From: Thalia democratica
Taxonomy: Eukaryota
Direction: 5' to 3'
DNA: 64,000 bases
Assembly (NCBI GenBank): GCA_965202585.1
Contig: OZ241829.1
Location: forward strand, 37,014,001-37,078,000
Position 1 is the stretch's first letter. Each line of letters starts with the position of its first letter. A model generated the notes under the pieces. That model searched no databases and was not told where the DNA came from. It worked only from the letters and a program-made list of their open reading frames with translations. The position numbers were made by a program, and so were the translations under genes. Positions 5,688 through 50,203 of this stretch are shown here, piece after piece.

Positions 5688-5689
<2 letters not shown>

Positions 5690-5720: not shown

Positions 5721-5723
<3 letters not shown>

Positions 5724-12531: not shown

Positions 12532-12713
12532 CAGCGTTAAAGCGAGAAGGGGCAAGTACCTCACTCTTAGAACTTTAACCTTATATAGTTTTTTTATTTA
12601 ATACATCCTAGAAAAAGTATCAACAAATAGATAAGTAAGTTGTATTTTTTAGAATTGCTATTGATTAGCCCTATTTTAATAACTTTCAATTTTGTTACAC
12701 TCTTCTTTTTCAG
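12532..12713 (+). promoter_or_regulatory. Candidate 5' non-coding exon (12535-12634) and 5'-UTR intron of copy 1; equivalent 40352-40528 in copy 2
   Basis: Homology between copies starts at T-tract+CAG (CAG|CGTTAAAG.GAGAAGGGGCAA.TACCTC..TCTTAGAA.TTTAA.CTTATATAG). There are donors GTAAGT at 12635 and GTAAGA at 40456, and an acceptor CAG|A-ATG in both. TATATAG at 12582/40402 is an alternative TATA-box reading. Confidence 0.5.
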
Positions 12714-12714
12714 A

Positions 12715-15700
12715 ATGAGGAGCATTTCTATTGTCGCCCTTTTGGTGGCAGTTGTCTTCGCACAAGAAGTCCCACGTTAGTATTCAATAAAAAACTTTTG
12801 TTTCAACATATAAAAAATAAATAATCTTTTTTTTTTATAGCACCACCAGTACCCGAGTCCGCTTGCGTACTCACTGGAGACCTTCAGTTCGTCATTGACT
12901 CTTCATCGTCTATCGGTGAAGAAAACTTCGCCCTTGTCAAAGACTTCGTCTACGAAGTAAGAAAATAAACTTTTTTTTTATTATTTTTGGACATAATTTA
13001 AATTTTAAGTTAATAGAGGTATAAAATAAAAACACTGATGTCATTTATTAATCTTAACTAAAACAGGTTGTCTCGAACCTTGATGTCGGAAAAGACGCTG
13101 TTCGTGTTGGTTTGTCCAGGTACAACTCTTGGGTCGATCACAGGTTCTTTTTGAACACCATGACCGATAAGGACGCCGTCTTGGAAGAAATCCAAAACTG
13201 TCCTTACTACGGACGTGGCACAAGAACTGCCCAAGCTCTGTCCGAAGTTGCCGCTCACGCACTTCAGCCATACAATGGATACAGAGGACATCCCACCGCA
13301 GTTGTTGTAATCACTGACGGAAGAAGTCAAGATGCTGCTGGTCTTGCTGCTGCAGCTAAAGCCGTCAAAGGTAGTTTTACTAAAAAAGCAATTTAGTTTT
13401 TCACTATTTTATACTTTTATTTGATAACATTTTATTACAATTAAAATAAAATTTTGCAATCTACATCTAAAAAAAAAAACGAAATTTTCATCTTAAAAGA
13501 AACTGTATTTAAAAATCTAGTTAAAGCATACTCGACAGAAAATTTCAATTTCAATTTAAAGCTTAATAAACAAGTTTATTTGCTATTTGCAAACAAAAAA
13601 AAAAGATCGTACAAAAACAAAAATATTCAAACGAATTTTGTCTTATTAGCAAAAGCTACTCGCGTCATTGCCATCGGTATTGGACCTAACGTTGTTGGTG
13701 AGGAACTAGTCACCATTGCTTCTCAACCCAGTGACACCAACGTCTACATGACCCCATCTTTCGAAGAACTGTCCGGAGTTGTCGGAGAAATCCTCGAAAA
13801 GGTAATAATGCCTTAATAGTTATACCTCAGCTATTAAACTGGTTTAAAAAATAAGAAGATCGAAAAGTTTGATACATAAGTTTATACTGTTTGTTTTTGC
13901 TTGAAAGATACTTTTAAACACTAACACTTTTACAAATAATTTAACTTGCTTATATGTTAGTATGACTTTTGTTTGCAATAAAACAAAAAACTTTTAAGGT
14001 TTGTGAAATTGAAGACGATGTCAATGAGTGTGCCGTCGGAAACGGAGGTTGCCAAGTTGAATGCGTTAACACTTTGGGCGCCTACTACTGCGATTGCCCC
14101 GCTGGATATGTTCTTAGCGGAAGCACTGAATGTCAAGATGTTGACGAGTGCTTGGAAGAAAACGGTGGATGTGAAGGTGGTTGCGAAAACAGCATTGGAA
14201 GCTACACCTGTACTTGCCCCGAAGGACTTGTTCTCGGAAACGATGGACTTTCATGTGGTTAGTAAAAGTTTACAAAAAAAAATATTTAAGTTAAAATTGT
14301 TTTAGAAATTAATTCCTTTTACAGTTGAAGATAGCTGCTTCGGAAACGATGCATGCGCTCACACTTGCCAGAACGTCGAAGGCGGAGAGTTTGTCTGCGT
14401 TTGCGACGCTGGATACGAACTTGCTGAAGATCTCGTCAGCTGCGTAGGTTAGATAAAAAATAGTTTTTATTTTTTGCTACCTTGGATAAACTGTTTTAAA
14501 ATTTATATTGCATTTTTAAAGAAAAATTTAAGAGCAAATAAAAATCAAAGAAACTATTATTTCTACAAAATACGTTTAATAAGTAGGTAAAATTTAAAAT
14601 TATTGAAACTTCTATTTTTTGGAGACAATAAATAATGTATCATTCAAAAGTTTTATTAATAGAAATGTGCACAGAGTATAGTAAACAATTGTTTAATACT
14701 AAAATTTGAGTGCAAGATAAAAACGTAGCACAGTTTTTAAATTGTAAAAAAAAACCGCAAAGCATGTTGCTGTGGTTTTTAGAAAAAACTACAAATCTTT
14801 ATCGAAATCATCGACATTTAAACTTGTCCTTAGGCAAATTAACACGTCAACTTTAAAATTTAATATCTATAAAAAGTTTTAGTTTGTGAGCAGCTTTTAA
14901 AGTCAAAGAAAAAATTAATAACAATTGAATAATTTTATCTAGATAATTGTACAAAATACTAAAAAAAGGGTTTTCTCTAGAACCAAAAACATTCTTGATC
15001 TAATATTTTTTCAACTAAACTAGATATTGACGAATGCTTGGAAGGTATCTCAGGTTGTCAACACGGATGTAACAACACCGTTGGAGGATTCACTTGCTCA
15101 TGTCCCGAAGGTCAAGGACTTCGTGATGATGGTCTTACTTGTGGTACCATTTGCTACACTTGCGAAAATGTCCTTTCCAACGACGAATGCAATGAAGCCG
15201 TTATCTGCTCAGATTTGGAGGTAAAAAGAAAGCAGTGTGAAATTTATTTTATGACGTTGAGTTATGTTATAGGAAACCTTTAAGGCTTAACTTTATATAC
15301 TTGATGATAAAATAAATAAAAAATGACATAACATAAAACAAACGTTTAAACCATACACAGTTAGTATTATTATTAAAATATTATTATTTTACCGCGTGTT
15401 AAAGAATAATAAAATTTCAGACTGCCTGCCAAACTAAGACTCGTCTTGTCGATGGCCTTCTTTACATCACCAAAAGATGCAAACAGCCTGAAGCTTGCTC
15501 AAACAACCAAATTCAAAACCCCCGTGATGCTGTTGATATCAAGCAATGTCAACTCGAAGGAGAAGTATCTGTTTGCAGGTGCTGTTGCTTCGAATCATAC
15601 TGTAACTCCGCTGGCGACTGTGAAGATGCTGACAATGGTGTAAGATGCCCATCTACTGACACTCTTGTTCCACCTAACGGGGGAAGTCTTGAATGCTCAG

Positions 15701-18700
15701 GAAATGCTGTAAGTGTAGTTTTTAGTTATATCAAGTAACAACTTTTATTTATCTAAATGTCTTGTATAAATGTACAGATCGGTGATTCATGCGCCATTGT
15801 CTGCCCTGCCGGATACGCTCCTGCTAACGGAAACGATCAAGTTTTCTGTAACTTGAAACCAAGATCTTTGGAAGGTGCTTGGGTTGGAGAAATCTCACCA
15901 TGTGTTGACATCAATGAGTGTCTTGACAACAACGGAGGTTGTTCTCACGACTGCGTTAATTTGAACGGAACATACGAGTGCAGATGTCCCAATGAAAACC
16001 CATGTCAGTTCCAAGTATTCGATCTTTTGTTCATTGTTGACTCATCTAGTTCCATTGGTGAAGCTAACTGGGCTACTATGGTCAACTGGCTTAACACCGC
16101 TGCATCCCTCTTTACCGTCGGACAAGATTTCACAAGGGTAAGTACTTTTTTATGAGACATACAAGCGTTTTATTAATAAGATTTAAGTGTTAATTGGATA
16201 TATTTTTAATCAGATTGCTATGGTAACTTACAACAACAACCAAGTTGCAAGAATGTTCTTCAACGAAATTGACAGCATCGAAGAGTTCCAACAAGGTCTT
16301 GATGTTAGTTTAAGTGAACATACTAAGCCTTAAAAGTTTCAATAAGATTAGTTTAAAAGTTAAAAATACAACACATTGAAAACAGGGTATTATCTATGAA
16401 GGACGTGGTACTAGAACAGCTTCCGCTATCAGGTTCTCTGCCGCTGAAATGCTGTCAGCTGCTTCTGGACGTCGTGCTTTCGCACCATTGGCAACTGTAG
16501 TAATTACTGATGGAAGAGCTTCTGATAAGAGATTTATGGATGAAGCCCTTGCACAATTGGTTGCTGCTGGATCCGTCAACTTTGCCATTGGTGTTTGTAA
16601 GTAGCCTAAATTTACGTTTAATACTAGGGAATAGGCTTCTATAACCGAATATTATCATTGCAGCTGAAAACTCTAACGAAAAAGAGTTGTTGAAAATTGC
16701 TGGAGGAGTCTCAGCCAGATACAGGCAAGTTGACAACTTCGATGCCCTTACCGAAGAACTTCTTAGTGATATGAGCATTTGCATTGGTGCTGAAGATCAG
16801 CATTACATGACTGTGAGTTAAAGATTTTTTTGTTAAGTACCACTATAACTGTTTATTAAACTTGACGTTTTTACTAGTCTGACGGTAAAACTTGTGATGT
16901 CGATGAGTGCGCTTACGACAACGGTGGTTGCTCCGATGATTGTGCTAACACTATCGGTTCATACGTGTGCTTGTGTCCACCAGGTGAAGAAATTGTAAAC
17001 GACGGTAGAACTTGCGATCTCAACGAATGTGCTGTCGGAAACGGAGGTTGCTCTGGTGATTGTGTCAACACTCTCGGTGGTTTCCACTGCTTGTGTGACA
17101 ACGAATTCCAAGTTGTAAGTATTTTTTTTCTGACAGATTACTTAATTATTTAGAGTAGTAGTCAAAATATGATTTTTATAGGATGGAGTCGATTGTGTAG
17201 ACTACAATGAGTGCGCTGACGACAACGGCGGTTGCTCACATGATTGCGTCAATCTCGTAGGAAGTTTCGAATGTGTCTGCCCACCAGGACTTGCACTTGA
17301 CACTGACGGTCTCACTTGTGTTGCTGATAGCTGCTTTGGACGTGACCATCCTGAACTCTGTGAGCACATTTGCACCAGCATCCCCGGAGGCGACTACGTC
17401 TGCTCATGCCAAGACGGTTACGAACTTAGCGAAGACATGCACAACTGTACTGAAGTCAACGAGTGCGACCGCAACAACGGTGGCTGCCAATATGATTGCA
17501 TCAACTTCGAAGGAGGATTCGAGTGTGCTTGCCCAGAAGGTATGTTCTTGCACACTGATGGAAAGAGCTGTGTCATCCAATGTTACACTTGCGAAAATGT
17601 CGGATCAAACGAAGAGTGCAGCGACCTTGTTGTAAGTACTTTTGAAATAGCTAGTGTATGTAGAGTTATTCTTATTTTACTTATTGTGAATAATTTTTAG
17701 ACTTGTCCACCAAGCGAGACTGCTTGCTTCGCCACTATGCGTACACGTGGATCTGAAGTTCTTATTACTAAGGGATGCAAACAAGATCTTGCTTGTGTCA
17801 ACAATCTTGTCCAAAACCCACGCGACCAAGGTGAAGGTCCATCTCAATGCAACGTGAACGGAATCCACTCAAAATGCGAGTGCTGCTGCTTCACTACTGA
17901 ATGCAATGCTGACTTGTGCCCATACCCCAACGAATGTAAGAGTTTTTTTCAAAGATAAGATAAATACTAAAAAGACAAAACTCTAAGTTATAATTTTGTA
18001 CAGTACCAACTTGTGCATCTTTCGTCGTTGAGAACGTTGTTTTCCGTGGTGTTGATTTGGATGGTTCAATCCTTCCAGGAGGTGTTGCTGCACTTGTCTG
18101 CCCAGAAGGGTTTGAACCCAGCTTTGGAGATGCTGGAGTTACCAAGCTTAACTGCGTCTACGACATGCTCAACGGAACATCTGCTTGGGATGGTTCATCA
18201 GAAGACTTTGACGTTTGCGTTGGTCAGTAAAATATATATTAACTGTCTATATTAATGAATAGTTAAATAAAAAAATTGTTTTTAGATATTGACGAATGTG
18301 CTGTAGACAACGGTGGCTGCGTTGCACCAGCATCTTGTGTAAACTACCCTGGTGGTTTTGAATGTGTATGCCCAGACTTCCCAGAAGATTACATTCTCGT
18401 TGATGGAACTATCTGCGAAAGAGATGAGTGCGCAGATATCGACCAAGGAGGTTGTTCTCACAACTGTACTAACACCATCGGAGGATACATGTGCTATTGC
18501 CCTGGCGAGCTCAGCCTTGTTACTGACGGACTCACTTGCGGTAGGATTGCCTTATTAAAATAATTATAATCAAAAATTTTTCACAATGAACCAAAATTTG
18601 TATGATTAGGTGTTTAAAAAAATATGAAACAAAGTAAACAAATAACTTATAACTTCAGACATCGACGAATGCCGTGAAAACAACGGAGGATGTGTTGAAA

Positions 18701-21700
18701 TTTGCATCAACACTTTGGGAGGAAACGAGTGTGGTTGTCACAACGCTGGATATGCTGTCGGTGAAGACGGTGTTACTTGTGAAGATATCGACGAGTGCTT
18801 GACCGATAACGGTGGCTGTAGCGATGTTTGTGTAAATACTGACGGAGGCTTTGAGTGCTCATGCTCAGAAGGACGTATTATGAATGAAGATGGTATGACA
18901 TGCCGGTAAGTAGGATAATCACAAACTTAATAAAAATTATGAGCTAAAAAATAAACTTTAAAAAAATTTCTATCAATGATTTTTATAATAGTGATGATCC
19001 TTGCTTCCCTGACAACGGTGGTTGCGAACAACTCTGCATTGTCGATGGGGATAACACTATTTGCGCTTGTGAAAGTGGATTCACATTGAACGATGACGGA
19101 ACCTGCACTGATATTGACGAATGTGCTCCAGGAGTCAACACTTGTAGCTACAACTGCACAAACACCATTGGAGGTTTCCAATGTAACTGCCCACCAGGAA
19201 CTGCTTTGGATCACGATGGAATAACTTGCGGTAAGTTTAGAAATAAACTAAAAGAAGAACAATCTAAACAGGACAATTTTTAAAATGTTACTTTTACATT
19301 CTGATAGGATTTGCATGTTTCTCATGTCACGGAGCTGCTACTAACGAAGAGTGCAATGCTGGACCTATGGAAGTATGTAGACCAGACTCACAGGCTTGTG
19401 AAAATGAAGTTCGCGTCCACCACGGAAAGAAACAAATTTTCAAGAGGTGCAAACAAGAGCATGCTTGCAGAAACAACCAGATCCAGAACCCACGTCAAGC
19501 TTTCTTACCAACACAGTGTAATGGTGATGAAGAAAATGACGTATGCAGATGCTGTTGTACCAGCCATTTGTGTAATGAAGCCGAACGTGTTTGCAGCAAG
19601 AGATGCAACATTAACAAAGCCGATCTTGCTATTATCATGGACTCTTCAAGCTCTGTCAAAGTCAAGAATTTTAACACCATGAGATCTTTCGTTCAGAATC
19701 TCGTAAACGCTTTCCAGGTTGGAGTCGGAATGGTCCACGTAGCTCTTATTAGGTACATATATTCTGTTGCAATGCTTTAAATATTAAAATTAACTTTTTT
19801 TTAATTCTTAAATCTTAAAACAGGTACAACAAAAACGTCGATGTCCGTCGTACATTTGCTGACAGCCAAACTGCCAACGCAGTCATGGACGATGTTCGTC
19901 AAACTCCTTACAGAGGATCTGGAACCAGAACTGGCCAAGCCATTCAGTACGCTCTTGAAAACATCTTCAAGACAGGAAATGGTATGAGAGCTGATGTTCC
20001 TCAAATCTTGGTCACAATTACTGATGGAAAGTCACAGGTTAGAATTTGTAAATGCATTTTCATATTTAACTAATTTATATCATAAAGTGCGTGAAGAAAA
20101 AAAAATATGAATATGTTCTTACCTAAGATAGTTTATTTATAACATTAGTATAGTTTTAAATAAAAACCAAACTAAATCAACTGTTTTAATTTTAGGATGA
20201 TGTTCTTGCCCCAAGTGAAGCTATTAGAGCAGCTGGAATTTCAACCTACGCCGTTGGTATTGGTACCACAATCGACAGATCTGAGGTTGTAAAGATATCT
20301 GGAGCCGAAGACCGTGCTTTCACCACTGCTTCTTTCGCTGCTTTGGAAACTACTGTACTTGAAAACATCCGTGTTTCTCTTTGCCAGAGTTAGTTTTATG
20401 CAAGATTATATTAAAAAAAAAATACTGAACAAAAAAAACTACTAATACATTTTTTAGACAAAGACGAATGTTTGGTTAACAATGGCGGTTGTTCTCATAC
20501 TTGTACTGACACTGACGGTTCATACATGTGTTCTTGCCCTGAAGACTTCGTTCTTAGTGGAGATCTCCGTACTTGCGTCTCAATCGCCGGTAAGATTTCT
20601 TACTATAAATAAAAAAAAAATTACTTAGTGATTAAAGATTATATAAGAACGATTAATGAAAATTAAAAAATGTATATATACTATTAGGATAAATTATATT
20701 TCAACTTTTGTTTTCAGAAAACCCTGATCAAGTTGATAATGTTGATGAGTGTGCCGATGACAACGGTGGCTGTACTCACACTTGTCAAGATACTGAAGAA
20801 GCATACGAATGCTTGTGTCCTGATAACATGTACTTGGAAGCCGACAACAAAACTTGCGCAAGTATGTAGACCTTCCTTTCGTTTTATATCTTGAAATACT
20901 TACATTAATTTAAACAAACTTTAAAGGCATCGACAACTGTGCTAGCAGCCCATGTGAACAGCAATGTGTCAATACTTTAAGTGGATACTTCTGTGAATGC
21001 GGTGCCGGATTTGTCCTTAATGCCGATGGATCAACTTGCTCCGCACGCACAACTGCTGTAGGCTGTGGTGCCGGATTCTCTCCTCTTGGACAAACTTGTG
21101 TTGCTGTTGTAGATGTTGCCACTTCTTTCGCTGACGCTGCAGCCGCTTGTACTGGTTTGGGAGCACGTTTGATGGCTGTCAATGACCTTGGAACTGCTAT
21201 TTTGGTCGGACGCGTTGCTGCCGGAGCTTGGGTTGGTTCATCAAGCGAACTTGAAGCTGGAGTATTTGTTAACTCTGACGGAAACGTCAATGCTTTGGAC
21301 AACTGGGCTGATGGTTCACCTGGAGATTTCAACAAGTGCGTGTATGTTGATGCAAACGGAAAGTTCAACACTGATAATTGTCTTTTCCGTAGACAAGCTG
21401 TCTGTGAAAAAGGTTTGCAACTTGTTAAAGCGAATAAAGTTATAAATTATTAAACTAAATTAATATTTTTTAAATAGCTCGTGCCGGTGGAGAAATTGCC
21501 TTCCTCAGTACCTGGCCAAATGGTGCTCAAGCTAGAGCTTCCTGGGTCACCGGATCACCATTCTTGAAGGTTTCAATGCCTACCATGATCAAGAGCGTAT
21601 CGGTAAGTTTTTAAACACACTATAATTAAACATAAAAAGTTATGTTTCGAACTTATTATTAATTGTTTGCAGTCATGGTTCTGTACTGTTGTGAGAAACG

Positions 21701-21861
21701 AAGGTAGCGCAGTGATCTTCTCTCAGAGCGATCTCGAGCGTGTATCTGGAAATGGATACTGCGAATTCGTTTTCGAAGGAAAAGAACAAGTACCAGTTGG
21801 TAGCTGCACAGTAGAAGCACTGAAAGATAGTAATAGTAATGGTGATTATGATGATTATTAA
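12715..21861 (+). CDS. Large secreted vWA/EGF/Ly6(three-finger)/CCP/C-type-lectin mosaic protein, copy 1 (27 coding exons, 2039 aa)
   Basis: Manually spliced exons, all GT-AG with consistent phases, total 6120 nt: 12715-12775, 12841-12956, 13067-13370, 13650-13801, 13999-14257, 14325-14447, 15024-15220, 15421-15708, 15778-16137, 16214-16303, 16386-16596, 16664-16812, 16878-17114, 17182-17631, 17701-17935, 18004-18222, 18286-18540, 18659-18905, 18992-19230, 19308-19752, 19824-20037, 20196-20388, 20458-20589, 20718-20861, 20927-21412, 21478-21602, 21673-21861. It starts with signal-like [20 protein letters not shown]. It has three vWA domains with DSSSS/GTRT/ITDG MIDAS residues, 19 EGF repeats (many D-I/V-D/N-E-C calcium-binding type), 3 Ly6-like, 2 CCP and 1 CTLD, and no transmembrane segment. 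It ends GDYDDY*. Confidence 0.93.
12864..14004 (+). other. vWA domain 1 of copy 1 (Cys-flanked, intact MIDAS)
   Basis: [18 protein letters not shown] ... GRGTRT ... [10 protein letters not shown] ... ILEKVC. Confidence 0.9.
15152..15621 (+). other. Ly6/uPAR (three-finger)-like domain 1, 14-Cys variant; paralogous domains at ~17581-17920 and ~19316-19590
   Basis: CxxC start, CKQxxAC, NNxxQNPR and C-x-CCC-x4-CN-x3/5-C end are present in all three. Confidence 0.75.
15907..16895 (+). other. EGF domain interrupted by vWA domain 2 (copy 1; copy 2 equivalent 43937-44908)
   Basis: DINEC..C..C..C.CP-NENP-[[17 protein letters not shown]...SDMSIC][16 protein letters not shown]. EGF Cys1-5 precede the vWA and an EGF-type SDGKTC ending follows it. 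Confidence 0.75.
21064..21405 (+). other. C-type lectin-like domain of copy 1 (within exon 25, 20927-21412; copy 2 exon 25 is 49260-49745)
   Basis: [13 protein letters not shown]...[15 protein letters not shown]...WVG...NWADGSPG...KCV...NTDNC...VCE. It lacks EPN/QPD and WND. Confidence 0.8.
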
Positions 21862-21865
21862 ACGG

Positions 21866-37675: not shown

Positions 37676-40529
37676 TATAGTAAAATAAAAGTTTGACATG
37701 TGAAGTGCACCCGATGCAAATAACACCCGATACAAAATGTTTTTAAATTTATACAATTTTAAAATCTAGGAAAAAACTATTTTTTACTTTAAATCTAGGC
37801 TTAATTTTAATTTGTTTAAAACAAAGAAAAATATTTTTTTACAACTGAAACTTTTATTAAGTTGCTCAAAAACCAAATAATAAAATATATGATCATTTTG
37901 AGTGTTTAGTGAGTAAAAAATGTTATTTTTTTATATAAAATATTGCACAAGCTTTTGAATAAATACTTTACAGGTTAATATTAAAACCTTTGTTGAAAAA
38001 AAAAAGTTTATTAAGCATAACTTCATTCAACAATCTTATATAGTTTGGTACAGGGATTTTTAAATAAAGCTATAACTAATTAAATTAAGCAAATTGAATA
38101 CAAAACTAATTTAATAATTGATTTTTTTTGCGTGGCTGTAAAAAAAACAAATAATGTTTGTACGTTGTAAACAAATTACCTAAGCTGTTTGTTCGCAACA
38201 TTTTATCTGTTGTTACAAGTTTTCTTTCATACTTAAAACTTAAACTTGTATGAAAGGCTCGGTAAAGTTGCCAAAATAAATGTAATAACAAGTTTGTTTA
38301 ACAACAAAATAAGATGTAACAAAAATACTAAAGTATATAAATTTATGTATTGTATTGTTTTATTAAAATTGGTCGGAGTTATTTGACCAAACATTCTAAA
38401 AAATGCAATAACAAAACTAAAAGCATATTGAAAGCTTTGAGTCATATATCTAAACCATGATCTTTTCAGTATATGATACAATTTATATTTAAATAGGTCG
38501 AAACAATAATGTTCAAAACAAAAATAAAACTGAAAAAATTATTTACTTTAGTTTTATTTAATTTTTTTTTTTAATTTGATTCAAAAAAAACAACTTTTAA
38601 AACTGGTTTAAGCTTTTTTAAGGTAAATCCAATCTAGAATAATTATTTACCTTTACAAAATAACCTAGTTGATCTACAAATAAAACCGTATTAAAAATTT
38701 TGCACGTAACAGAAAACATTTGTAAACTTGTTAGTTTTGTTTTCGCTCAAAAGTTACAACAATTGTTTTAAAAACAAGTTTTCTCTTGTGAATTTTTACA
38801 CTTGAAAACTTTTACTAGAAAGTAAATTCATACAATTATAATTATTACAAAGGTTTTTAGGTATAATTTAGATGCTGTTTAACATTTTTTCAAATAAAAC
38901 GTGTTTTATTAAGTTTTGATATACTTATTTATAATATCTGTCTATTTTAAAGTTCAAAAATTAAGATACTGCTGAAAATATTACTTTTGTTTTCTTTAAC
39001 GTGACCCAATTTATTATCTAAAGAAAAGTTCTGAAAAGTTTACACTTTAAGCAGTAGTTTTTTTTTTTCTGGCTAGTATTGATTTTATAAACATAAGTAG
39101 CTTTAATTTAACAAAATTGTAGTCTTATGAAGATAAATTTTGAAAACTAATAAAAAGTTACAACAAACTTATATGTTAAACAACCCAATTGAAATATCTA
39201 ACAATATTAAACTATAGTTCCAGATAAGTAATAATATAACTGTTAGCAACTAGATCATAAACTTTAAATCAACTATGACATTAAGATGCTACAGTGTTAA
39301 AAGTTAAATACAAATAGTGTTTAATGAAAATTTTGCAGTTATTTTAGAATTTATAAAATGCAAAACCAAAGTTATTATCAAATTTAATTATAAATCTTAA
39401 GTTTAGAACTTTTATTTTTTTTTAATTATGTTAAAAATTTAATAGCTTTCGTTGGAACATTATGTTATAGCATTTATGACATGAAAAACAACATGATCTA
39501 CAAAAATATTTGATCGAAATTTCAAAGAAAAGTAAGAAAACTACCGTACTTAACTGGTACCATGTAAAACTTGTAAGGATGTTTAACAACATAGTTGCTA
39601 CTTACTTGACTTTACTTTACTTACGTTCATTTTATTATTTAATTTAATAATAAACAAAACAGCAGCCTTAGTTTAATATAATTTTTTTTCAACTTAGACT
39701 AAGTAGAGGCAATAATGTAAGTAGATAATAATTTAATTGTGTGCTAGTTTTCGTATCTAGATTACGTTTACAAAACTTTTCAAATAACTAAAAAGTATTA
39801 AAAATCAAAAGTTTTAATGAACTTTTACTTGAACAAAATTTTTATCTTTCAGAAAGACTGCTTACACAATTCCACGTTTTATGGTTTTATTTTGTGGCTG
39901 TTAGTGTTTCAAACGCTTAAAGTCATTTTATGTGTTATTTTTTCCAATTAAGAAAACATTAATAAAGAAATGTATGCTTTGTTGACATGCCTCCAGGCCT
40001 TTTTAATTCCTATTTAAAAAGCTTAATTTTCCATCTAAACTATAATCAAAAATGTTTTACACCAAGCTTGTAAAGTTGTTTTAAGACTAAATTTAAAGCT
40101 TTTTGATTATGAAGTTAGCTTAAAAATTCTTAAAAAAAGTAATTGTTATATTAGAAATGAATGTTTTAAGTTTTTGAATAAGCATCTTTCCGAAATTGAA
40201 TTAAAGTGTAATATTTTCAAGATTAAGGGTTAAGATGAGCTGGACAAAAATTATCAAAGAGAATATGTAGTTTAAAATGTTAAAATATAGCTACTTAAAA
40301 CTGTTGTATTTTTTTGGTGCTTAAACAATTAACGAAACGAGTTTAATTTTTCAGCGTTAAAGTGAGAAGGGGCAATTACCTCGATCTTAGAATTTTAAGC
40401 TTATATAGTTTTTAATTTAACTCTAAAAATAAAAGAAAGGTCTGCATTAGTACAGGTAAGAAATCAACTACGATTTAATAATTAAATAGTAACGTTTAAC
40501 ATAAATTATTTTGATACAAAACAAACAGA

Positions 40530-43500
40530 ATGAGGTGCATTTCTTTGGTTGCCCTTTTGGTGGCAGTTGTCTTCGCTCAAGAAGTCCCACGTTAGTATTC
40601 AATAAAAAACTTTTGTTTCAACATATAAAAAATAAATAATCTTTTTTTTTTCATAGCACCACCAGTACCCGAGTCCGCTTGCGTACTCACTGGAGACCTT
40701 CAGTTCGTCATTGACTCTTCATCGTCTATTGGTACAGAAAACTTCGCCCTTGTCAAAGACTTCGTCTACGAAGTAAGAAACTAATGTTTTATCTCTTCTC
40801 AATTTTGAACATAACTTAAAAGCAATTTAGTGAGATATTCATATTTTGTTGAACATTTTTGTTCAATGAATGACTTCTACAGTTTCCTAAAAAGTGATGT
40901 GACTAACCACACTAAACAGGTTGTCTCGAACCTTGATGTCGGAAAAGACGCTGTTCGTGTTGGTTTGTCCAGGTACAACTCTTGGGTCGATCACAGGTTC
41001 TTTTTGAACACCATGACCGATAAGGACGCCGTCTTGGAAGAAATCCAAAACTGTCCTTACTACGGACGTGGCACAAAAACTGCCCAAGCTCTGTCCGAAG
41101 TTGCCGCTCACGCACTTCAGCCATACAACGGATACAGAGGACATCCCACCGCAGTTGTTGTAATCACTGACGGAAGAAGCCAAGATTCTGCTGGTCTTGC
41201 TGCTGCAGCTAAAGCAATTAAAGGTAGTCTAAAACGTGATTTTTTTGTACAAATAGTCTTTAGAATCCTATAATAAACTAAAAATAACAATATTGCTCTA
41301 CTCATGGTTTTATAACACTTTTTAACAGTTTGATTATAATAACATTGCTTTAAAACTTTACTACTATCCTAATTTACAGCTAAAGCTACTCGCGTCATTG
41401 CCATCGGTATTGGACCTAATGTTGTCGGTGATGAATTAGTCACCATTGCCTCTCAACCCAGTGACACCAACGTCTACATGACCCCATCTTTCGAAGAGCT
41501 TTCCGGTGTTGTCGGAGAAATCCTCGAAAAGGTAACATCATCAATTTGTTTATAACTGATTTAGTAATCGAAGTTGAAAAAATAATTTATACTTTGTTTT
41601 TGTTTGACAATAAGTTTGTATTTTCAATTTAGCTATTTATTACTTATTTATGTTTCTGGTTTTTAATTGATAAACTTTTAAGGTTTGTGAAATTGAAGAC
41701 GATGTCAATGAGTGTGCTGTCGGAAACGGAGGTTGCCAAGTTGAATGCGTTAACACTCTGGGCGCCTACTACTGCGATTGCCCCGCTGGATATGTTCTTA
41801 GCGGAAGCACTGAATGTCAAGATGTTGACGAGTGCTTGGAAGAAAACGGTGGATGTGAAGGTGGTTGCGAAAACAGCATTGGAAGCTACACCTGTACTTG
41901 CCCCGAAGGACTTGTTCTCGGAAACGATGGACTTTCATGTGGTTAGTAAAAGTTTACAAAAAAAACTATTTAAGATAACTTTGTTTTAGAAATTAATTCC
42001 TTTTACAGTTGAAGATAGCTGCTTCGGAAACGATGCATGCGCTCACACTTGCCAGAACGTCGAAGGCGGAGAATTTGTCTGCGTTTGCGACGCTGGATAC
42101 GAACTTGCTGAAGATCTCGTCAGCTGCGTAGGTTAGAAAAAATAAACTATTCACTCCGTCATAAAATGAATTATTTAATGACAAACATGTTTTCTGTGTC
42201 ATTTTTATAGAACTTAATGGGAATACTATAAAAAGTGATAGTTTATGAAACTTACTTTTTATATCCACAAGTTTTGTTCTTTTTTAATCGTAACAAACTT
42301 ATGTTTTTTATAGATAGCTGAAATTTATTTGTTTTGTAAAAGTTTGTCTTAAAGTAAAAACACTTCGCTGGCCAGATATTTTTGTTGGCGGGTGTAACGT
42401 GACTTACCCTTAACTTAAAGCTATTAAAAAGTAACAAAATACATTTTTGAGAAAAAAGCATGTGGTAAGCGTTGAAATAAAAAATATATTTGTTTAAGCG
42501 TAAATATAAGACCTAAATTATATATTTAAATGACTGCTTTAAATTACTTAAAATATTTTTTACCAACAATAAACGAGACAAGCCTTGTACAAAATTCAAT
42601 TTTTAAATACTTTTTTACTAATAAACTTTTTAACTCTAATTGAACAAATTTTAAAAGCATTTGAAACTTTAATTGCTATAACTTTTAACCATAATTTTCA
42701 AGCTTTAAAAACAAACTTTTCAAAACTTGTGGTAACTTATTAAATTATGTATCTTAACATAACGTATCACGATTTGGTTTTGCGGGTAGAAACACACCTA
42801 GATATACTATAGGTGTATCAAAGTTTTATAACCACTTTAAAAGTTTAGCGGTTTGTAAGTACATAAATTAGAGGCCACTAAATACTGCGGTCGATAAACA
42901 GAAACCACGTATATGTCTTTAGGCAAGTTTACACGTGAGCCGAAAACGACAACATTTTGATAAAAACTTTTTAACTAATATGTATATAAACAACTATCTC
43001 AAAACTTATTTGTCAACTACTTCTTAGGATAGTTTTAACAAAATATAAAATAGATATTGACGAATGCTTGGAAGGAACATCGGGTTGCCAACACGGATGT
43101 AACAACACCGTTGGAGGATTTTTGTGCTCATGTCCCGAAGGTCAAGGACTTCGTGATGATGGTCTTACTTGTGGTACCATTTGCTACACTTGCGAAAATG
43201 TCCTTTCCAACGACGAATGCAATGAAGCCGTTATCTGCTCGGATTTGGAGGTAAAAAGAAAGCAGTGTGAAATTTATTTTATGACGTTGAGTTATGTTAT
43301 AGGAAACTTTTAAGATTTAACTGTATATACTTAATGATAAAATAAAAATAAAATGGAATAACATAAAACAAACGTTTAAACCATACACAATTAGCATTAT
43401 TATTAAAATATTTTTATTTTACCGCGTGTTAAAGAATAATAAAATTTCAGACTGCCTGCCAAACTAAGACTCGTCTTGTCGATGGCCTTCTTTACATCAC

Positions 43501-46500
43501 CAAAAGATGCAAACAGCCTGAAGCTTGCTCAAACAACCAAATCCAAAACCCCCGTGATGCTGTTGATATCAAGCAATGTCAACTCGAAGGAGAGGTATCT
43601 GTTTGCAGGTGCTGTTGCTTTGAATCATACTGTAACTCCGCTGGTGACTGTGAAGATGCTGACAATGGTGTAAGATGCCCATCTACTGACACTCTTGTTC
43701 CACCTAACGGAGGAAGTCTTGAATGCTCAGGAAATGCTGTAAGTATAATTTTTAGTTATATCAAGTAATAACTTTTATTTATCTAAATCTCTTGTATAAA
43801 TGTACAGATCGGTGATTCATGCGCCATTGTTTGCCCTGCCGGATACGAACCTGCAAACGGAAACGATCAAGTTTTCTGTAACTTGAAACCAAGATCTTTG
43901 GAAGGTGCTTGGGTTGGAGAAATCTCACCTTGTGTTGACATCAATGAGTGTCTTGACAACAACGGAGGTTGTTCTCACGACTGCGTTAACTTAAACGGAA
44001 CATACGAGTGCAGATGTCCCAATGAAAACCCATGTCAGTTCCAAGTATTCGATCTTTTGTTCGTTGTTGACTCATCTAGTTCAATCGGACCTGACAACTG
44101 GGCTACTATGGTCAACTGGCTTAACACCGCCGCATCCCTCTTTACCGTCGGACAAGATTTCACAAGGGTAAGTACTTTTTTTTAGGGAAATACTGTTTAA
44201 AATCAAACAGTTTGTTTTTGTAGATTGCTATGGTAACTTACAACAACGACCAAGTTGCAAGAATGTTCTTCAACGAAATTGACAGCATCGAAGATTTCCA
44301 AAAAGGTCTTGATGTTAGTTTAAGTGAACATACTAAGCCTTAAAAGTTTTAAAAAGATCATTTTAAATGTTGAAAATACAACACATTAAAAACAGGCTAT
44401 TGTCTATGAAGGACGTGGTACTAGAACAGCTTCCGCTATCAGGTTCTCTGCCGCTGAAATGCTGTCAGCTGCTTCTGGACGTCGTGCTTTCGCACCATTG
44501 GCAACTGTAGTAATTACTGATGGAAGAGCTTCTGATAAGAGATTTATGGATGAAGCCCTTGCACAATTGGTTGCTGCTGGATCCGTCAACTTTGCCATTG
44601 GTGTTTGTAAGTAGCCTAAATTCACGTTTTATACTAGGGAATAGGCTTCTATAACCGAATATTATCATTGCAGCTGAAAACTCTAACGAAAAGGAATTGT
44701 TGAAAATTGCTGGAGGAGTCTCAGCCAGATACAGGCAAGTTGACAACTTCGATGCCCTTACCGAAGAACTTCTTAGTGATATGAGCATTTGCATTGGTGC
44801 TGAAGATCAGCATTACATGACTGTGAGTTAAAGATTTTTTTTTTGTTAAGTACCACTATATCTGTTTATTAAACTTGACGTTTTTACTAGTCTGACGGTA
44901 AAACTTGTGATGTCGATGAGTGCGCTTACGACAACGGTGGTTGCTCCGATGATTGTGCTAACACTATCGGTTCATACGTGTGCTTGTGCCCACCAGGTGA
45001 AGAAATTGTTAACGACGGTAAAACTTGCGATCTCAACGAATGTGCTGTCGGAAACGGAGGTTGCTCTGGTGATTGTGTCAACACTCTTGGTGGTTTCCAC
45101 TGCTTGTGTGACAACGAGTTCCAAGTTGTAAGTATCTTTTTTCTGACAGATTACTTAATTATTTAGAGTAGTAGTCAAAATATGATTTTTATAGGATGGA
45201 GTCGATTGTGTAGACTACAATGAGTGCGCTGACGACAACGGCGGTTGCTCACATGATTGCGTCAATCTCGTAGGAAGTTTCGAATGTGTCTGCCCACCAG
45301 GACTTGCACTTGACACTGACGGTCTCACTTGCGTTGCTGATAGCTGCTTTGGACGTGACCATCCTGAACTCTGTGAGCACATTTGCACCAGCATCCCCGG
45401 AGGCGACTACGTCTGCTCATGCCAAGACGGTTACGAACTTAGCGAAGACATGCACAACTGTACTGAAGTCAACGAGTGCGACCGCAACAACGGTGGCTGC
45501 CAATACGATTGCATCAACTTCGAAGGAGGATTCGAGTGTGCTTGCCCAGAAGGTATGTTCTTGCACACTGATGGAAAGAGCTGTGTCATCCAATGTTACA
45601 CTTGCGAAAATGTCGGATCAAACGAAGAGTGCAGCGACCTTGTTGTAAGTATTTTTGAAGTAGCTAGTTTATGTTGAGTTATTATTATTTTACTTATTGT
45701 AAATAACTTTTAGACTTGTCCACCAAGCGAGACTGCTTGCTTCGCCACTATGCGTACACGTGGATCTGAGGTTCTTATTTCTAAGGGATGCAAACAAGAT
45801 CTTGCTTGTGTCAACAATCTTGTCCAAAACCCACGCGACCAAGGTGAAGGTCCATCTCAATGCAACGTGAACGGAATCCACTCAAAATGCGAATGCTGCT
45901 GCTTCACTACTGAGTGCAATGCTGACTTGTGCCCATACCCCAACGAATGTAAGAGTTTTTTTCAAAGATAAGATAAATACTAAAAAGACAAAACTCTAAG
46001 TTATAATTTTGTACAGTACCAACTTGTGCATCTTTCGTCGTTGAGAACGTTGTTTTCCGTGGTGTTGATTTGGATGGTTCAATCCTTCCAGGAGGTGTTG
46101 CTGCACTTGTCTGCCCAGAAGGGTTTGAACCCAGCTTTGGAGATGCTGGAGTTACCAAGCTTAACTGCGTCTACGACATGCTTAACGGAACATCTGCTTG
46201 GGATGGTTCATCAGAAGACTTTGACGTTTGCGTTGGTTAGTAACAAAATTATTATTAACTGTCTATATTTATGAATAAATAAATATAAAATTTGTTTGCA
46301 GATATTGACGAATGCGCTGTAGACAACGGTGGCTGCGTTGCACCAGCATCTTGTGTAAACTACCCTGGTGGTTTTGAATGTGTGTGCCCAGACTTCCCAG
46401 AAGATTACGTTCTCGTTGATGGAACTATCTGCGAAAGAGATGAGTGCGCAGATATCGACCAAGGAGGTTGTTCTCACAACTGTACTAACACCATCGGAGG

Positions 46501-49500: not shown

Positions 49501-50203
49501 TTTGATGGCTGTCAATGACCTTGGAACTGCTATTTTGGTCGGACGCGTTGCTGCCGGAGCTTGGGTTGGTTCATCAAGCGAACTTGAAGCTGGAGTATTT
49601 GTCAACTCTGACGGAAGTGTTAATGCTTTGGACAACTGGGCTGATGGTTCACCTGGAGATTTCAACAAGTGCGTGTATGTTGATGCAAACGGAAAGTTCA
49701 ACACTGATAATTGTCTTTTCCGTAGACAAGCTGTCTGTGAAAAAGGTTTGCAACTTGTTAAAGCGAATAAAGTTATAAATTATTGAACTAAATTATTATT
49801 TTTTAAATAGCTCGTGCCGGTGGAGAAATTGCCTTCCTCAGTACCTGGCCAAATGGTGCTCAAGCTAGAGCTTCTTGGGTCACCGGATCACCATTCTTGA
49901 AGGTTTCAATACCTACCATGATCAAGAGCGTATCTGTAAGTTTTTAAACACACTATAATTAAACATAAAAAGTTATGTTTCGAACTTATTATTAATTTTT
50001 TGCAGTCATGGTTCTGTACTGTTGTGAGAAACGAAGGTAGCGCAGTGATCTTCTCTCAGAGCGATCTCGAGCGTGTATCTGGAAATGGATACTGCGAATT
50101 CGTTTTCGAAGGAAAAGAACAAGTACCAGTTGGTAGCTGCGTAGTAGAAGCATTGAAAGATAGTAATAGTAATGGTGATTATGATGCTTATGATAATTAT
50201 TAA
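40530..50203 (+). CDS. Same mosaic protein, copy 2 (27 coding exons, 2042 aa)
   Basis: Exons 40530-40590, 40657-40772, 40920-41223, 41380-41531, 41683-41941, 42009-42131, 43054-43250, 43451-43738, 43808-44167, 44224-44313, 44396-44606, 44674-44822, 44891-45127, 45195-45644, 45714-45948, 46017-46235, 46302-46556, 46684-46930, 47000-47238, 47316-47760, 47832-48045, 48530-48722, 48789-48920, 49051-49194, 49260-49745, 49811-49935, 50006-50203. Every exon has the same length as in copy 1 except the last (+9 nt; ends GDYDAYDNY*). No stops or frameshifts were seen, and many differences are synonymous. Confidence 0.93.

What the first reader, a model, noticed from the sequence alone, without database searches (positions are those of the whole stretch)
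12715..21861. ~2040-aa secreted protein combining 3 vWA, 19 EGF, 3 Ly6, 2 CCP and a CTLD
Seen: the domain order given in the summary, three intact MIDAS motifs, a signal peptide, and no membrane anchor or GPI-like tail. Established: vWA, CCP, CTLD and Ly6/CD59 folds are typical of complement/innate-immune, adhesion and matrix proteins. I recall vWA/EGF/Ly6 mosaics from ascidian genomes but cannot name an orthologue with this order. Inference: a multivalent extracellular scaffold (tunic/matrix, adhesive, or immune/recognition aggregation factor) encoded by a two-gene cluster.
Basis: partly seen in the sequence, partly recalled or inferred. Interest (0 to 1): 0.7.

Follow-up and report, generated by a model that had tools for sequence, protein, structure and literature searches.

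The report
Secreted tunicate mosaic matrix protein
This is a real, expressed gene for a 2,039-residue secreted protein of a free-swimming tunicate, also present in sea squirts, that strings together adhesion modules and ends in a fold like bacterial cellulose-binding modules, so it may tie the animal's cellulose coat to cells or other matrix proteins.

Summary
Positions 12715-21861 (+) carry 27 coding exons, all with GT-AG introns, encoding 2,039 residues. The order is signal peptide, 3 vWA domains with complete MIDAS motifs, 19 EGF (13 calcium-binding type), 3 Ly6/uPAR domains, 2 CCP and a CTLD. There is no membrane anchor.

Plankton metatranscriptome contigs show the splice joints of exons 2-17. 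A 6.6-kb intron-less mRNA contig from a sister species (96% identical protein) matches all 26 coding junctions.

An intact tandem copy lies at 40530-50203 (97.9% identical, dN/dS 0.15).

They are uncharacterised: Ciona (auto-named "fibrillin-3 isoform X4"), Clavelina and Styela. The Ciona protein matches the published domain count of Ci-meta1 (6 EGF + 13 cbEGF); identity is unproven.

They fold confidently into a beta-sandwich whose best matches in five structure libraries are almost all bacterial CBM2 modules (cellulose, xylan or chitin binding; Z 9.4). No sequence search finds CBM2.

My best reading is a calcium-stiffened matrix adaptor anchored to tunic cellulose.

The scan's other notes cover this same stretch only.

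The parts
12535..12634 (+). 5' non-coding exon of gene 1. It follows an AG acceptor at 12533-12534, the probable spliced-leader addition site, and is followed by a GT donor at 12635.
   Evidence: The sister-species mRNA contig L001, positions 23-125, aligns here and then jumps to 12714. Sequence read. That the unaligned L001 5' end is the Ciona-type 16-nt spliced leader rests on my memory.
12715..21861 (+). Gene 1 coding region: 27 exons, 2,039 aa plus a stop codon. Exons: 12715-12775, 12841-12956, 13067-13370, 13650-13801, 13999-14257, 14325-14447, 15024-15220, 15421-15708, 15778-16137, 16214-16303, 16386-16596, 16664-16812, 16878-17114, 17182-17631, 17701-17935, 18004-18222, 18286-18540, 18659-18905, 18992-19230, 19308-19752, 19824-20037, 20196-20388, 20458-20589, 20718-20861, 20927-21412, 21478-21602, 21673-21861.
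   Evidence: model. (RNA joints of exons 2-17). (all junctions match P0273 / L001).
12715..12762 (+). Signal peptide (aa 1-16).
   Evidence: It is the only hydrophobic 19-aa window with a Kyte-Doolittle mean above 1.6. N-termini are conserved in the orthologues.
12879..14001 (+). vWA1 (aa 34-212), MIDAS complete.
   Evidence: Pfam VWA E 7.1e-21 on exon 3. MIDAS positions.
14002..15142 (+). EGF1-4 (aa 213-378).
   Evidence: Pfam EGF_CA, FXa_inhibition and cEGF.
15143..15624 (+). Ly6/uPAR (LU) domain 1 (aa 379-472).
   Evidence: 52% identical to LU3. CCCx(4-6)CN motif at aa 458. Family profile and fold.
15640..15906 (+). CCP/Sushi 1 (aa 478-543), a six-cysteine type.
   Evidence: hhalign 97.4% against validated Sushi repeats, via orthologues 44-45% identical to the window's module.
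15907..16895 (+). EGF5 with vWA2 (aa 577-762, MIDAS complete) inserted in its last loop.
   Evidence: Pfam VWA on exons 9 and 11. The EGF tail 'HYMTSDGKTC' follows the vWA. The arrangement is conserved in P0157.
16896..17571 (+). EGF6-10 (aa 777-979).
   Evidence: Pfam hits on exon 14.
17572..17919 (+). LU domain 2 (aa 980-1072).
   Evidence: 41% identical to LU3. Motif at aa 1060. Toxin_TOLIP hit at 982-1035 in P0273.
18006..18221 (+). CCP/Sushi-like 2 (aa 1079-1150); divergent.
   Evidence: No Pfam hit. hhalign probability 16%. ESM-Atlas features 0.95 for Sushi, 68 of 100 hits. BLAST to CCP1 of orthologues.
18222..19229 (+). EGF11-16 (aa 1151-1397).
   Evidence: Open segments read. 19 EGF stretches in P0273.
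19230..19591 (+). LU domain 3 (aa 1398-1492).
   Evidence: Profile hits LYPD1, LYPD6B and LYPD6. AlphaFold pLDDT 87 and a three-finger fold.
19613..20390 (+). vWA3 (aa 1500-1682), MIDAS complete.
   Evidence: Pfam VWA. MIDAS.
20460..21042 (+). EGF17-19 (aa 1683-1812).
21064..21411 (+). C-type lectin-like domain (aa 1820-1935). It lacks the EPN/QPD and WND motifs.
   Evidence: Pfam Lectin_C E 6.6e-11. Sequence read.
21412..21819 (+). C-terminal CBM2-like beta-sandwich (aa 1936-2026), with invariant Trp at aa 1948 and 1979.
   Evidence: AlphaFold model of a family member, P0158, with pLDDT 87.5. Fold matches. Conservation. No sequence-level match.
21820..21858 (+). Acidic, Tyr-rich tail (aa 2027-2039); no hydrophobic GPI-type signal.
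40355..40455 (+). 5' non-coding exon of gene 2.
   Evidence: The unmatched end of an RNA contig maps to 40423-40452. L001 aligns to 40353-40417. Splice sites read.
40530..50203 (+). Gene 2: intact tandem copy with 27 coding exons and 2,042 aa.
   Evidence: 97.9% aa identity, dS 0.071, dN 0.010, dN/dS 0.15, all introns GT..AG.

Best explanation
The gene encodes a secreted, rod-like matrix adaptor that is conserved across tunicates.

Shown:
- It is one spliced, expressed gene with an intact recent duplicate.
- The domain order is SP, vWA1, EGF1-4, LU1, CCP1, EGF5 (with vWA2 inserted), EGF6-10, LU2, CCP2, EGF11-16, LU3, vWA3, EGF17-19, CTLD, then a beta-sandwich.
- Full-length colinear orthologues occur in Ciona, Clavelina and Styela.
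- The C-terminal domain has a CBM2-like fold.

Inferred:
- The 13 calcium-binding EGF modules stiffen the protein into an extended spacer.
- The three MIDAS-competent vWA domains, the LU modules and the CCP modules bind proteins or cell-surface ligands, as vWA domains do in matrilins, collagen VI and integrins.
- The C-terminal CTLD plus CBM2-like pair anchors the molecule to a polysaccharide, most likely the cellulose microfibrils of the tunic. Cellulose is a structural material that, among animals, only tunicates make.

On this reading the protein cross-links the cellulose scaffold to epidermal cells or to other matrix proteins.
For: - Single transcript and splicing.
- Domains.
- Secretion without an anchor.
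- Purifying selection on both copies (dN/dS 0.15).
- Colinear orthologues at 46-49% identity over about 2,020 residues in three ascidian orders, all keeping 3 LU, 3 vWA, about 19 EGF, the CTLD and the C-terminal domain.
- C-terminal domain model: pLDDT 87.5.
- Foldseek against PDB: the 16 best hits are all CBM2-type cellulose-, xylan- or chitin-binding modules, probability about 1.0, TM about 0.5-0.64.
- VIA-align: Z 9.4 (rmsd 2.4 A over 82 of 87 residues) for the Cellulomonas fimi xylan-binding CBM2b, 8.2 for EngD CBM2, 7.3 for Cex CBM2a; unrelated folds score 6 or less.
- ESM Atlas: TM 0.67-0.71 to actinobacterial CBM_2 proteins.
- Swiss-Prot AlphaFold models: the top 23 are all CBM2-bearing enzymes or cellulose/chitin-binding proteins.
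- AFDB clusters: the best hit is a 369-aa CTLD protein matched in its C-terminal 100 residues. Animal-type 'endoglucanase' and 'cellulase' entries and bacterial CBM2 proteins follow.
- Two Trp residues are invariant in 14 orthologues. They sit at the ends of strands 1 and 4 of the model. From my memory of Cex CBM2a, two of its three cellulose-stacking Trp sit at those places.
- That tunicates use cellulose structurally is established knowledge (stated in 10.1101/637728 and PMC10334666).
Against: - No sequence method links the domain to CBM2. Pfam CBM_2 does not match at E up to 10. Profiles A7 and A8 find nothing in the PDB. The language-model score is only 0.75.
- The fold was modelled on a family member about 40-47% identical to the window's domain, from a shallow 6-row alignment.
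- Small beta-sandwiches recur, and Z 9.4 is only modestly above the tool's stated background of 7-8.
- The terminal disulfide typical of CBM2 is absent, and the third aromatic position is not aromatic.
- There are no tissue, localisation or binding data.
- The CTLD lacks canonical sugar-binding residues.
- That the host is a cellulose-making tunicate rests on a one-gene tree and named relatives. My searches of its genome for GH6 and GT2 domains were uninformative.
Confidence: 0.45

Rival explanations
1. It is a general extracellular-matrix or adhesion protein that works like matrilin, AMACO or fibulin and has no link to cellulose. On this view the C-terminal beta-sandwich is simply another protein-binding or oligomerisation module.
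For: - vWA plus cbEGF arrays are the hallmark of matrilin-type adaptors.
- No sequence homology to CBM2 was found.
- The canonical CBM2 disulfide and the third aromatic residue are missing.
- Ascidian adhesive and stolon proteomes are reported to contain EGF- and vWF-domain proteins (PMC12817120).
Against: Five independent structure-library searches return CBM2 almost exclusively. The two Trp at CBM2-like positions are invariant from the window's lineage to Styela. The domain always follows a CTLD, another carbohydrate-associated fold.
Confidence: 0.3
2. It is a humoral immune recognition or aggregation factor. On this view vWA and CCP act as in complement factor B/C2 and its regulators, the CTLD acts as a pattern receptor, and the LU domains act like CD59.
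For: The domain types (vWA, CCP, CTLD, LU/CD59 fold) all occur in complement and innate immunity. The tandem duplication shows amino-acid changes enriched in the vWA domains: 20 of 42, p 0.003.
Against: - There is no serine protease, MACPF, TEP or other complement effector domain.
- The CTLD lacks EPN/QPD and WND.
- The gene is a single conserved orthologue with a fixed 19-EGF architecture across tunicates, and dN/dS is 0.15. This is unlike fast-evolving, expanding immune families. Only two close copies exist in the 802-Mb genome.
Confidence: 0.1
3. It is a secreted developmental signal or signal modulator. It could be the metamorphosis-associated papilla product Ci-meta1, or a modulator of Wnt/LRP6 or nicotinic receptors acting through its LYPD6/Lynx-like LU domains.
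For: - The Ciona orthologue and this protein both have 19 EGF, of which 13 carry the calcium-binding motif.
- Ci-meta1 is described as secreted, with 6 EGF and 13 cbEGF, and is expressed in the anterior region right after metamorphosis begins (PMC3760835, citing Nakayama et al. 2001).
- The LU domains are closest to LYPD6, LYPD6B and LYPD1.
Against: - Identity with Ci-meta1 is unproven.
- From its gene tree the window's organism looks like a holoplanktonic tunicate, and such animals have no settling larva (my inference; this rests on general knowledge, not on a tool).
- A 2,039-aa rod of 19 EGF with three MIDAS domains looks structural rather than like a diffusible ligand.
Confidence: 0.1

Closest known systems
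Ciona intestinalis XP_026693868.1 ('fibrillin-3 isoform X4', 2,053 aa), the Clavelina lepadiformis unnamed protein (2,281 aa) and Styela clava LOC120345319 (2,294 aa)
   Same: They are colinear over about 2,020 residues at 46-49% identity. Each has 3 vWA with MIDAS, about 19 EGF, 3 LU (CCCx4-6CN), a CTLD and the same C-terminal domain. They group as orthologues in the tree.
   Different: They are predicted proteins only, with automatic or no names and no function. The 'fibrillin' name is unsupported because no TB domain is found. The ascidian C-terminal domains lack the Cys pair seen in the window's lineage. Clavelina has an extra N-terminal vWA and Styela a Gly/Thr-rich tail.
Ci-meta1 (Nakayama, Satou and Satoh 2001, as summarised in PMC3760835)
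   Same: It is secreted and has 6 EGF plus 13 calcium-binding EGF repeats. That is exactly the count found in this protein and in its Ciona orthologue.
   Different: The summary lists no vWA, LU, CCP or CTLD. Only its expression at metamorphosis is known.
Matrilins and AMACO (VWA2)
   Same: They are secreted adaptors built of MIDAS-type vWA domains separated by EGF modules, and they link matrix components.
   Different: Matrilins end in a coiled-coil oligomerisation domain and have 1-10 EGF. Here there is no coiled coil (the C-terminus is a beta-sandwich), there are 19 EGF, and LU, CCP, CTLD and CBM2-like modules are added.
SVEP1 (polydom) and the selectins
   Same: They combine vWA, EGF and CCP (SVEP1) or CTLD, EGF and CCP (selectins). 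CCP1 is of the six-cysteine type, which I recall as typical of selectin CCPs. Related tunicate LU-bearing proteins are auto-named 'SVEP1-like' or 'E-selectin-like'.
   Different: There is no pentraxin or HYR domain, no long CCP array and no transmembrane segment. LU and CBM2-like modules are absent from SVEP1 and the selectins.
LYPD6 / LYPD6B / LYPD1 (Ly6/uPAR three-finger proteins)
   Same: They are the best sequence-profile and structural matches of the LU modules. The C-terminal CCxxxxCN signature is shared.
   Different: Those are small, single-domain proteins, GPI-anchored or secreted. Here three LU modules are embedded in a 2,039-aa mosaic, carry extra cysteines (a CCC motif) and have no GPI signal.
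CBM family 2 (for example Cellulomonas fimi Cex CBM2a and Xyn11A CBM2b, ScLPMO10C CBM2, and the Pyrococcus and Streptomyces chitin-binding CBM2 modules)
   Same: The fold and size match: about 90-100 residues, Z up to 9.4, TM 0.6-0.7. Conserved Trp residues sit at two topologically equivalent positions (plus my memory of CBM2a).
   Different: There is no detectable sequence similarity. The terminal disulfide and the third aromatic residue are missing. The module sits at the end of an animal matrix protein, not on a bacterial glycoside hydrolase. Binding is untested.
Oikosins (house proteins of Oikopleura)
   Same: They are secreted tunicate matrix proteins built of EGF_CA, VWA, CCP and CLECT modules and are associated with a cellulose scaffold (PMC3390340, PMC3071929).
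   Different: No oikosin of this architecture is described. No full-length Oikopleura orthologue appeared in my searches. The AFDB hit E4WSN7 (CTLD plus the same C-terminal fold) may be from Oikopleura, but that is from my memory of the accession range.

Membership tests
von Willebrand factor type A domain (PF00092) | Pfam match above the gathering score | tested here: met
   Exon-level hits down to E 7.1e-21. Three stretches in P0273, E 1.4e-107.
von Willebrand factor type A domain (PF00092) | Complete MIDAS (DxSxS ... T ... D) | tested here: met
   DSSSS at 40, 588 and 1509; GxGTRT at 108, 656 and 1577; ITDG at 141, 690 and 1611.
Calcium-binding EGF (PF07645) | Pfam match and the [DN]x[DN][EQ]C calcium consensus | tested here: met
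   EGF_CA, FXa_inhibition and cEGF above cut-off. 13 of the 19 EGF modules carry the consensus.
Ly6/uPAR (LU, three-finger) domain | Pfam gathering score | tested here: not met
   Toxin_TOLIP 19.0 bits against 21.2; UPAR_LY6_2 14.6 bits against 31.5.
Ly6/uPAR (LU, three-finger) domain | Profile-level homology to solved LU proteins, and the three-finger fold | tested here: met
   Profile A1 against the PDB: LYPD1 3.5e-6, LYPD6B 2.4e-4, LYPD6 5.8e-3. The model (pLDDT 87) has LYPD6, LYPD6B, LYPD1, erabutoxin, CD59 and uPAR as its top Foldseek hits.
Ly6/uPAR (LU, three-finger) domain | C-terminal CC-x(4-6)-CN signature | tested here: met
   Present at aa 458, 1060 and 1479, and in all orthologues.
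Sushi / CCP (PF00084) | Homology to validated Sushi repeats: module 1 | tested here: met
   hhalign 97.4%, E 1.4e-11, using orthologues of module 1 against 11 repeats that all pass Pfam Sushi. The window's module is 44-45% identical to those orthologues. No direct Pfam hit on the window's exons.
Sushi / CCP (PF00084) | Homology to validated Sushi repeats: module 2 | tested here: inconclusive
   No Pfam hit. hhalign 16%. The mixed profile finds no Sushi in the PDB. ESM-Atlas features 0.95 for Sushi. BLAST E 3e-5 to CCP1 of an orthologue.
C-type lectin-like domain (PF00059) | Pfam match above the gathering score | tested here: met
   Lectin_C E 6.6e-11, 43.3 bits against 22.6.
C-type lectin-like domain (PF00059) | EPN/QPD and WND residues of calcium-dependent sugar binding | tested here: not met
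   Direct reading shows 'SPG' and 'NTD' at these places. Ascidian orthologues have QPG or QPS.
Carbohydrate-binding module family 2 (PF00553) | CBM2 beta-sandwich fold | tested here: met
   CBM2 dominates the top matches in PDB Foldseek, VIA (Z 9.4, 8.2, 7.3), AFDB clusters, ESM Atlas (TM about 0.7) and Swiss-Prot models. The model is of a family member, not of the window's own sequence.
Carbohydrate-binding module family 2 (PF00553) | Sequence match to the family profile | tested here: not met
   No CBM_2 hit at E up to 10 in 14 members. No PDB hit with profiles A7 or A8. No PF00553 match in the genome.
Carbohydrate-binding module family 2 (PF00553) | Surface aromatic platform (three Trp in CBM2a, two in CBM2b) | tested here: inconclusive
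   Two invariant Trp (aa 1948, 1979) lie at the ends of strands 1 and 4. Their equivalence to the CBM2 Trp residues rests on my memory. Model coordinates could not be inspected.
Carbohydrate-binding module family 2 (PF00553) | Binding to cellulose, xylan or chitin | not testable with these tools
   Needs a binding assay.
Matrilin | C-terminal coiled-coil oligomerisation domain | tested here: not met
   The C-terminus is an all-beta domain plus a 13-residue acidic tail.
Fibrillin / LTBP (the automatic name of the Ciona orthologue) | TB (8-Cys) domains, PF00683 | tested here: not met
   No TB hit in P0278 or P0273.
SVEP1 / polydom | Pentraxin and HYR domains with a long CCP array | tested here: not met
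   Absent from the Pfam results for P0273 and P0278. Only two CCP-like modules are present.
Ci-meta1 orthologue group | Secreted; 6 EGF plus 13 calcium-binding EGF | tested here: met
   19 EGF, of which 13 carry the calcium motif, in the window protein and in Ciona P0278. Published description in PMC3760835.
Ci-meta1 orthologue group | Sequence identity of the Ciona orthologue with the Ci-meta1 cDNA | not testable with these tools
   The original paper and its sequence are not held.

The most novel reading that the evidence does not exclude
The C-terminal module is a true descendant of a bacterial CBM2. On this reading the tunicate ancestor acquired it with, or around the time of, the horizontally transferred cellulose genes (CesA / GH6). 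Exon shuffling then moved it onto a metazoan vWA/EGF/LU/CCP/CTLD matrix protein. The result would be the animal's dedicated linker between cellulose and cells or matrix, conserved from sea squirts to pelagic tunicates.
Probability: 0.2. Interest if true: 0.8.

Novelty: new variant of a known kind. Interest (0 to 1): 0.5.

Why it matters
Tunicates are the only animals that build a structural cellulose coat. Their cellulose synthase came from bacteria.

How the cellulose fibres are held, oriented and coupled to the epidermis is still under study, with recent work on Epi-1 (10.1101/2024.09.30.615758) and GH6-1 (PMC10334666, PMC10986139). In the papers I could search, I found no description of an endogenous cellulose-binding matrix protein.

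This protein is large, conserved, under purifying selection and expressed, and it joins classic animal adhesion modules to a CBM2-like fold. That makes it a concrete, testable candidate for the missing link. The test can be done directly in Ciona or Phallusia, where the orthologue exists and CRISPR and cellulose staining are routine.

Without the cellulose link it is still a tidy example of lineage-specific domain shuffling: LU domains inside a mosaic, and a vWA domain nested in an EGF loop. It also corrects a misleading 'fibrillin-3' annotation.

Tried and rejected
- Pfam on single exons found no Ly6, Sushi or C-terminal family above cut-off, so profiles and folds were needed.
- A mixed CCP1+CCP2 profile found no Sushi in the PDB.
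- A word-based search with the C-terminal domain of P0158 found only P0158 and P0005.
- Profiles A7 and A8 found nothing in the PDB, and Pfam gave only chance-level CBM_X2 and CBM46 hits.
- Pfam CBM_2 and GH6 found nothing in the genome when searched exon by exon. GT2_3 gave one unexamined hit. These results do not show absence.
- I could not build a profile-profile comparison with true CBM2 sequences, because no tool gave me CBM2 sequences by reference and typing them from memory is unreliable.
- The many GH9 endoglucanase loci in the genome were not mined for their own CBM2 modules.
- The Ci-meta1 paper is not held, and literature searches for Ci-meta1 found only one secondary mention.
- Read laying covered only 12400-18399. 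The 3' third rests on the sister-species mRNA contig and on orthologous transcript proteins.
- Membership as a matrilin, fibrillin or SVEP1 was rejected; see the membership tests.
- A complex prediction was not run, because no specific protein partner is claimed.

Full report
**What is there.** The window is AT-rich (intergenic GC about 22-29%) with two GC-richer blocks at about 12.7-21.9 kb and 40.4-50.2 kb. On the + strand of the first block, stop-free segments line up in consistent phases and are separated by short GT..AG introns. The assembled model has 27 coding exons running from 12715 to 21861. Its CDS is 6,120 nt, giving 2,039 aa plus a stop.

**Is it one expressed gene?** Public marine plankton metatranscriptomes hold 40-51% of the sampled words of 15900-21900.
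- Contigs of four RNA runs from two studies, laid on 12400-18399, carry every predicted joint from exon 2 to exon 17.
- Single contigs chain exons 2-3, 3-8, 5-14, 11-15 and 15-16. No contig ends inside the larger introns of 279, 197, 576 and 200 nt.
- One apparent non-GT/AG joint (16304/16388) is the predicted junction plus a G-to-C variant that matches gene 2.
- A length-matched search then found P0273, 2,040 aa and 96% identical. It is encoded without introns on a 6,635-nt metatranscriptome contig, L001, with CDS 127-6249.
- All 26 coding junctions of my model align to P0273 without a single indel.
- L001 aligns exon by exon to the window at 88-95% nucleotide identity, so it comes from a sister species.
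- L001 also reveals a 5' non-coding exon at 12535-12634. Upstream of that, its own 5' end reads as what I recall to be the Ciona-type 16-nt spliced leader. Other notes of this scan also report a Ciona-type leader in this genome (unchecked).

RNA therefore refutes the "several separate genes" alternative.

**The second gene.** All 27 exons recur at 40530-50203 with intact GT..AG introns and an open frame of 2,042 aa.
- The two proteins are 97.9% identical, with dS 0.071, dN 0.010 and dN/dS 0.15. Most short introns are 90-100% identical, while several others have been remodelled by indels.
- An RNA contig carries gene 2's own 5' exon, so both copies are transcribed.
- The 802-Mb genome holds no other close copy.
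- A more distant relative with EGF, CTLD and the same C-terminal domain lies 3.2 Mb away on the same contig.

**Domains.**
- Pfam confirms three vWA domains, EGF_CA / FXa_inhibition / cEGF modules and a C-type lectin-like domain. All three MIDAS motifs are complete.
- There are 19 EGF modules, 13 with the calcium-binding consensus. One of them, EGF5, carries vWA2 inside its last loop.
- The "Ly6" modules fall just below Pfam's cut-offs. A profile of 41 homologous modules hits solved LYPD1 (E 3.5e-6), LYPD6B and LYPD6. An AlphaFold model of the window's own third module (pLDDT 87) matches LYPD6, LYPD6B, LYPD1, erabutoxins, CD59 and uPAR. They are genuine LU / three-finger domains.
- CCP1 is a genuine Sushi repeat of a six-cysteine type: hhalign 97.4% against Pfam-validated repeats.
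- CCP2 is divergent. hhalign gives only 16%, but language-model features score 0.95 for Sushi and it resembles CCP1. I call it probable.
- Hydropathy shows only the N-terminal signal peptide and an acidic C-terminus, so there is no membrane or GPI anchor.
- The CTLD lacks the EPN/QPD and WND residues of calcium-dependent sugar binding.

**The unassigned C-terminus.** About 90 residues after the CTLD (21412-21819) match no Pfam family.
- They are conserved in all 14 family members examined, with invariant Arg, Trp, Gly-Ala, Trp and Gln.
- Because the window's domain is split over three exons, I folded a family member, P0158, which is 40-47% identical, with the window's exons in the alignment. 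The model is confident (pLDDT 87.5) and all-beta.
- Foldseek against the PDB returns CBM2-type modules as its 16 best hits.
- VIA-align against 48,161 representative chains gives Z 9.4 (rmsd 2.4 A, 82 of 87 residues) for the Cellulomonas fimi xylan-binding CBM2b, 8.2 for EngD CBM2 and 7.3 for the Cex cellulose-binding domain. Unrelated folds score 6 or less.
- The ESM Atlas gives TM about 0.7 to actinobacterial CBM_2 proteins.
- Swiss-Prot AlphaFold models give 23 CBM2-bearing proteins in a row.
- In the AFDB clusters the best hit is a 369-aa CTLD protein matched in its last 100 residues. Animal-type endoglucanases and bacterial CBM2 proteins follow.
- Sequence methods see nothing, so homology as opposed to fold resemblance is open.
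- The two invariant Trp sit at the ends of strands 1 and 4. From memory, two of the three cellulose-stacking Trp of CBM2a sit there. The third position is not aromatic here, as in the xylan-binding CBM2b.

**Relatives and host.**
- Full-length colinear orthologues at 46-49% identity exist in Ciona intestinalis (XP_026693868.1, auto-named "fibrillin-3 isoform X4"), Clavelina lepadiformis and Styela clava. Several unnamed plankton transcripts are 63-68% identical. All keep 3 LU, 3 vWA, about 19 EGF, the CTLD and the C-terminal domain.
- No TB, pentraxin or HYR domain is present, so "fibrillin" and "SVEP1" are misnomers.
- In a maximum-likelihood tree rooted with paralogues, the window's clade is nested among ascidian sequences, next to the Clavelina clade. 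Together with its presence in plankton RNA, this suggests a pelagic tunicate, probably a thaliacean. That is an inference from one gene.
- The same LU module heads many other tunicate mosaics, auto-named "SVEP1-like" or "E-selectin-like".
- Ci-meta1 of Ciona is described as secreted with 6 EGF plus 13 calcium-binding EGF repeats and is expressed anteriorly at the onset of metamorphosis (PMC3760835). Both this protein and its Ciona orthologue have exactly 13 + 6. It is a strong lead but unproven, because the original paper is not held.

**How it most likely works.**
- Shown: it is a secreted, cysteine-rich (182 Cys) modular protein, conserved and under purifying selection.
- Inferred from the established behaviour of the modules: cbEGF arrays form calcium-stiffened rods, and MIDAS vWA domains bind protein ligands through a metal ion. 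LU and CCP modules add protein-binding surfaces.
- The C-terminal CTLD plus CBM2-like pair is the best candidate for a polysaccharide anchor. In an animal lineage that builds its coat from cellulose, the obvious ligand is cellulose.
- I therefore favour a cellulose-anchored multivalent matrix adaptor (about 0.45).
- Rivals: the same adaptor without any cellulose link (0.3), an immune recognition factor (0.1) and a developmental signal or modulator (0.1).

**Novelty.**
- The domain kinds are all known, and the gene family is already in databases as unstudied predictions.
- New here are the verified architecture and transcript, the orthologue set, the correction of the automatic names and the CBM2-like C-terminal fold.
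- My searches of the held literature found no endogenous tunicate cellulose-binding matrix protein.
- The scan's other notes concern this same stretch only.

Noticed in passing
window 15907-16895: vWA2 is inserted in the last (Cys5-Cys6) loop of EGF5. The EGF starts '...CRCPNENPC', then the vWA follows, then '...[19 protein letters not shown]' completes the usual EGF tail. An extra Cys on each side could clamp the insertion. The arrangement is conserved in the 59%-identical P0157. This is the subject of another note of the scan.
   Followed up: partly
window 12715-21861 against 40530-50203: The 42 amino-acid substitutions between the two copies are enriched in the vWA domains: 20 of 42 fall in 27% of the length (binomial p 0.003). 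One cluster lies at aa 1595-1604 of vWA3.
   Followed up: partly
window 12533-12535 and 40353-40355; L001:1-24: The sister-species mRNA contig begins with what looks like a template-switch remnant. It is followed by a 16-nt sequence I recall as the Ciona-type spliced leader, joined exactly at an AG acceptor that is conserved upstream of both genes. This suggests both genes are trans-spliced.
   Followed up: partly
G000:C5:40283589-40292148 (-), loci L003/L004: A more distant paralogue with EGF modules, a CTLD and the same C-terminal CBM2-like domain lies 3.2 Mb downstream on the same contig. Its C-terminus resembles the P0158/P0005 subgroup.
   Followed up: partly
window 23123-23897 (+): Open frames here show reverse-transcriptase-like motifs (a '...YMDD...' segment). 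They lie in the AT-rich spacer between the two genes and are probably a decayed retroelement.
   Followed up: no
window 60343-64000 (+): These exons belong to another gene and carry an acyltransferase-like 'FPEGTCTN' motif, of the lysophospholipid acyltransferase type. The gene runs off the end of the window.
   Followed up: no
G000, several contigs (for example C2:100205841-100213331, C8:36485328-36492411, C10:17951299-17955617): The genome holds at least ten loci with strong GH9 endoglucanase exon matches, several of them in tandem pairs. This is of interest beside a candidate cellulose-binding matrix protein.
   Followed up: no
proteins P0031, P0061, P0103, P0240 and many of the 157 hits at E<1e-10: The same extended LU module (consensus CWxC...CKQxxAC.NN..QN.R.AW.P.QCN...SVCRCCC..D.CN) sits at the N-terminus of many other tunicate mosaics with long Sushi arrays and vWA domains. 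LU-headed mosaics thus look like a lineage-wide theme.
   Followed up: partly
window 21820-21858 and 50165-50200: The protein ends in a short acidic tail with Tyr residues flanked by Asp (gene 1 '...GDYDDY'; gene 2 is three residues longer). This is a context typical of tyrosine sulfation. It is not conserved in ascidians.
   Followed up: no
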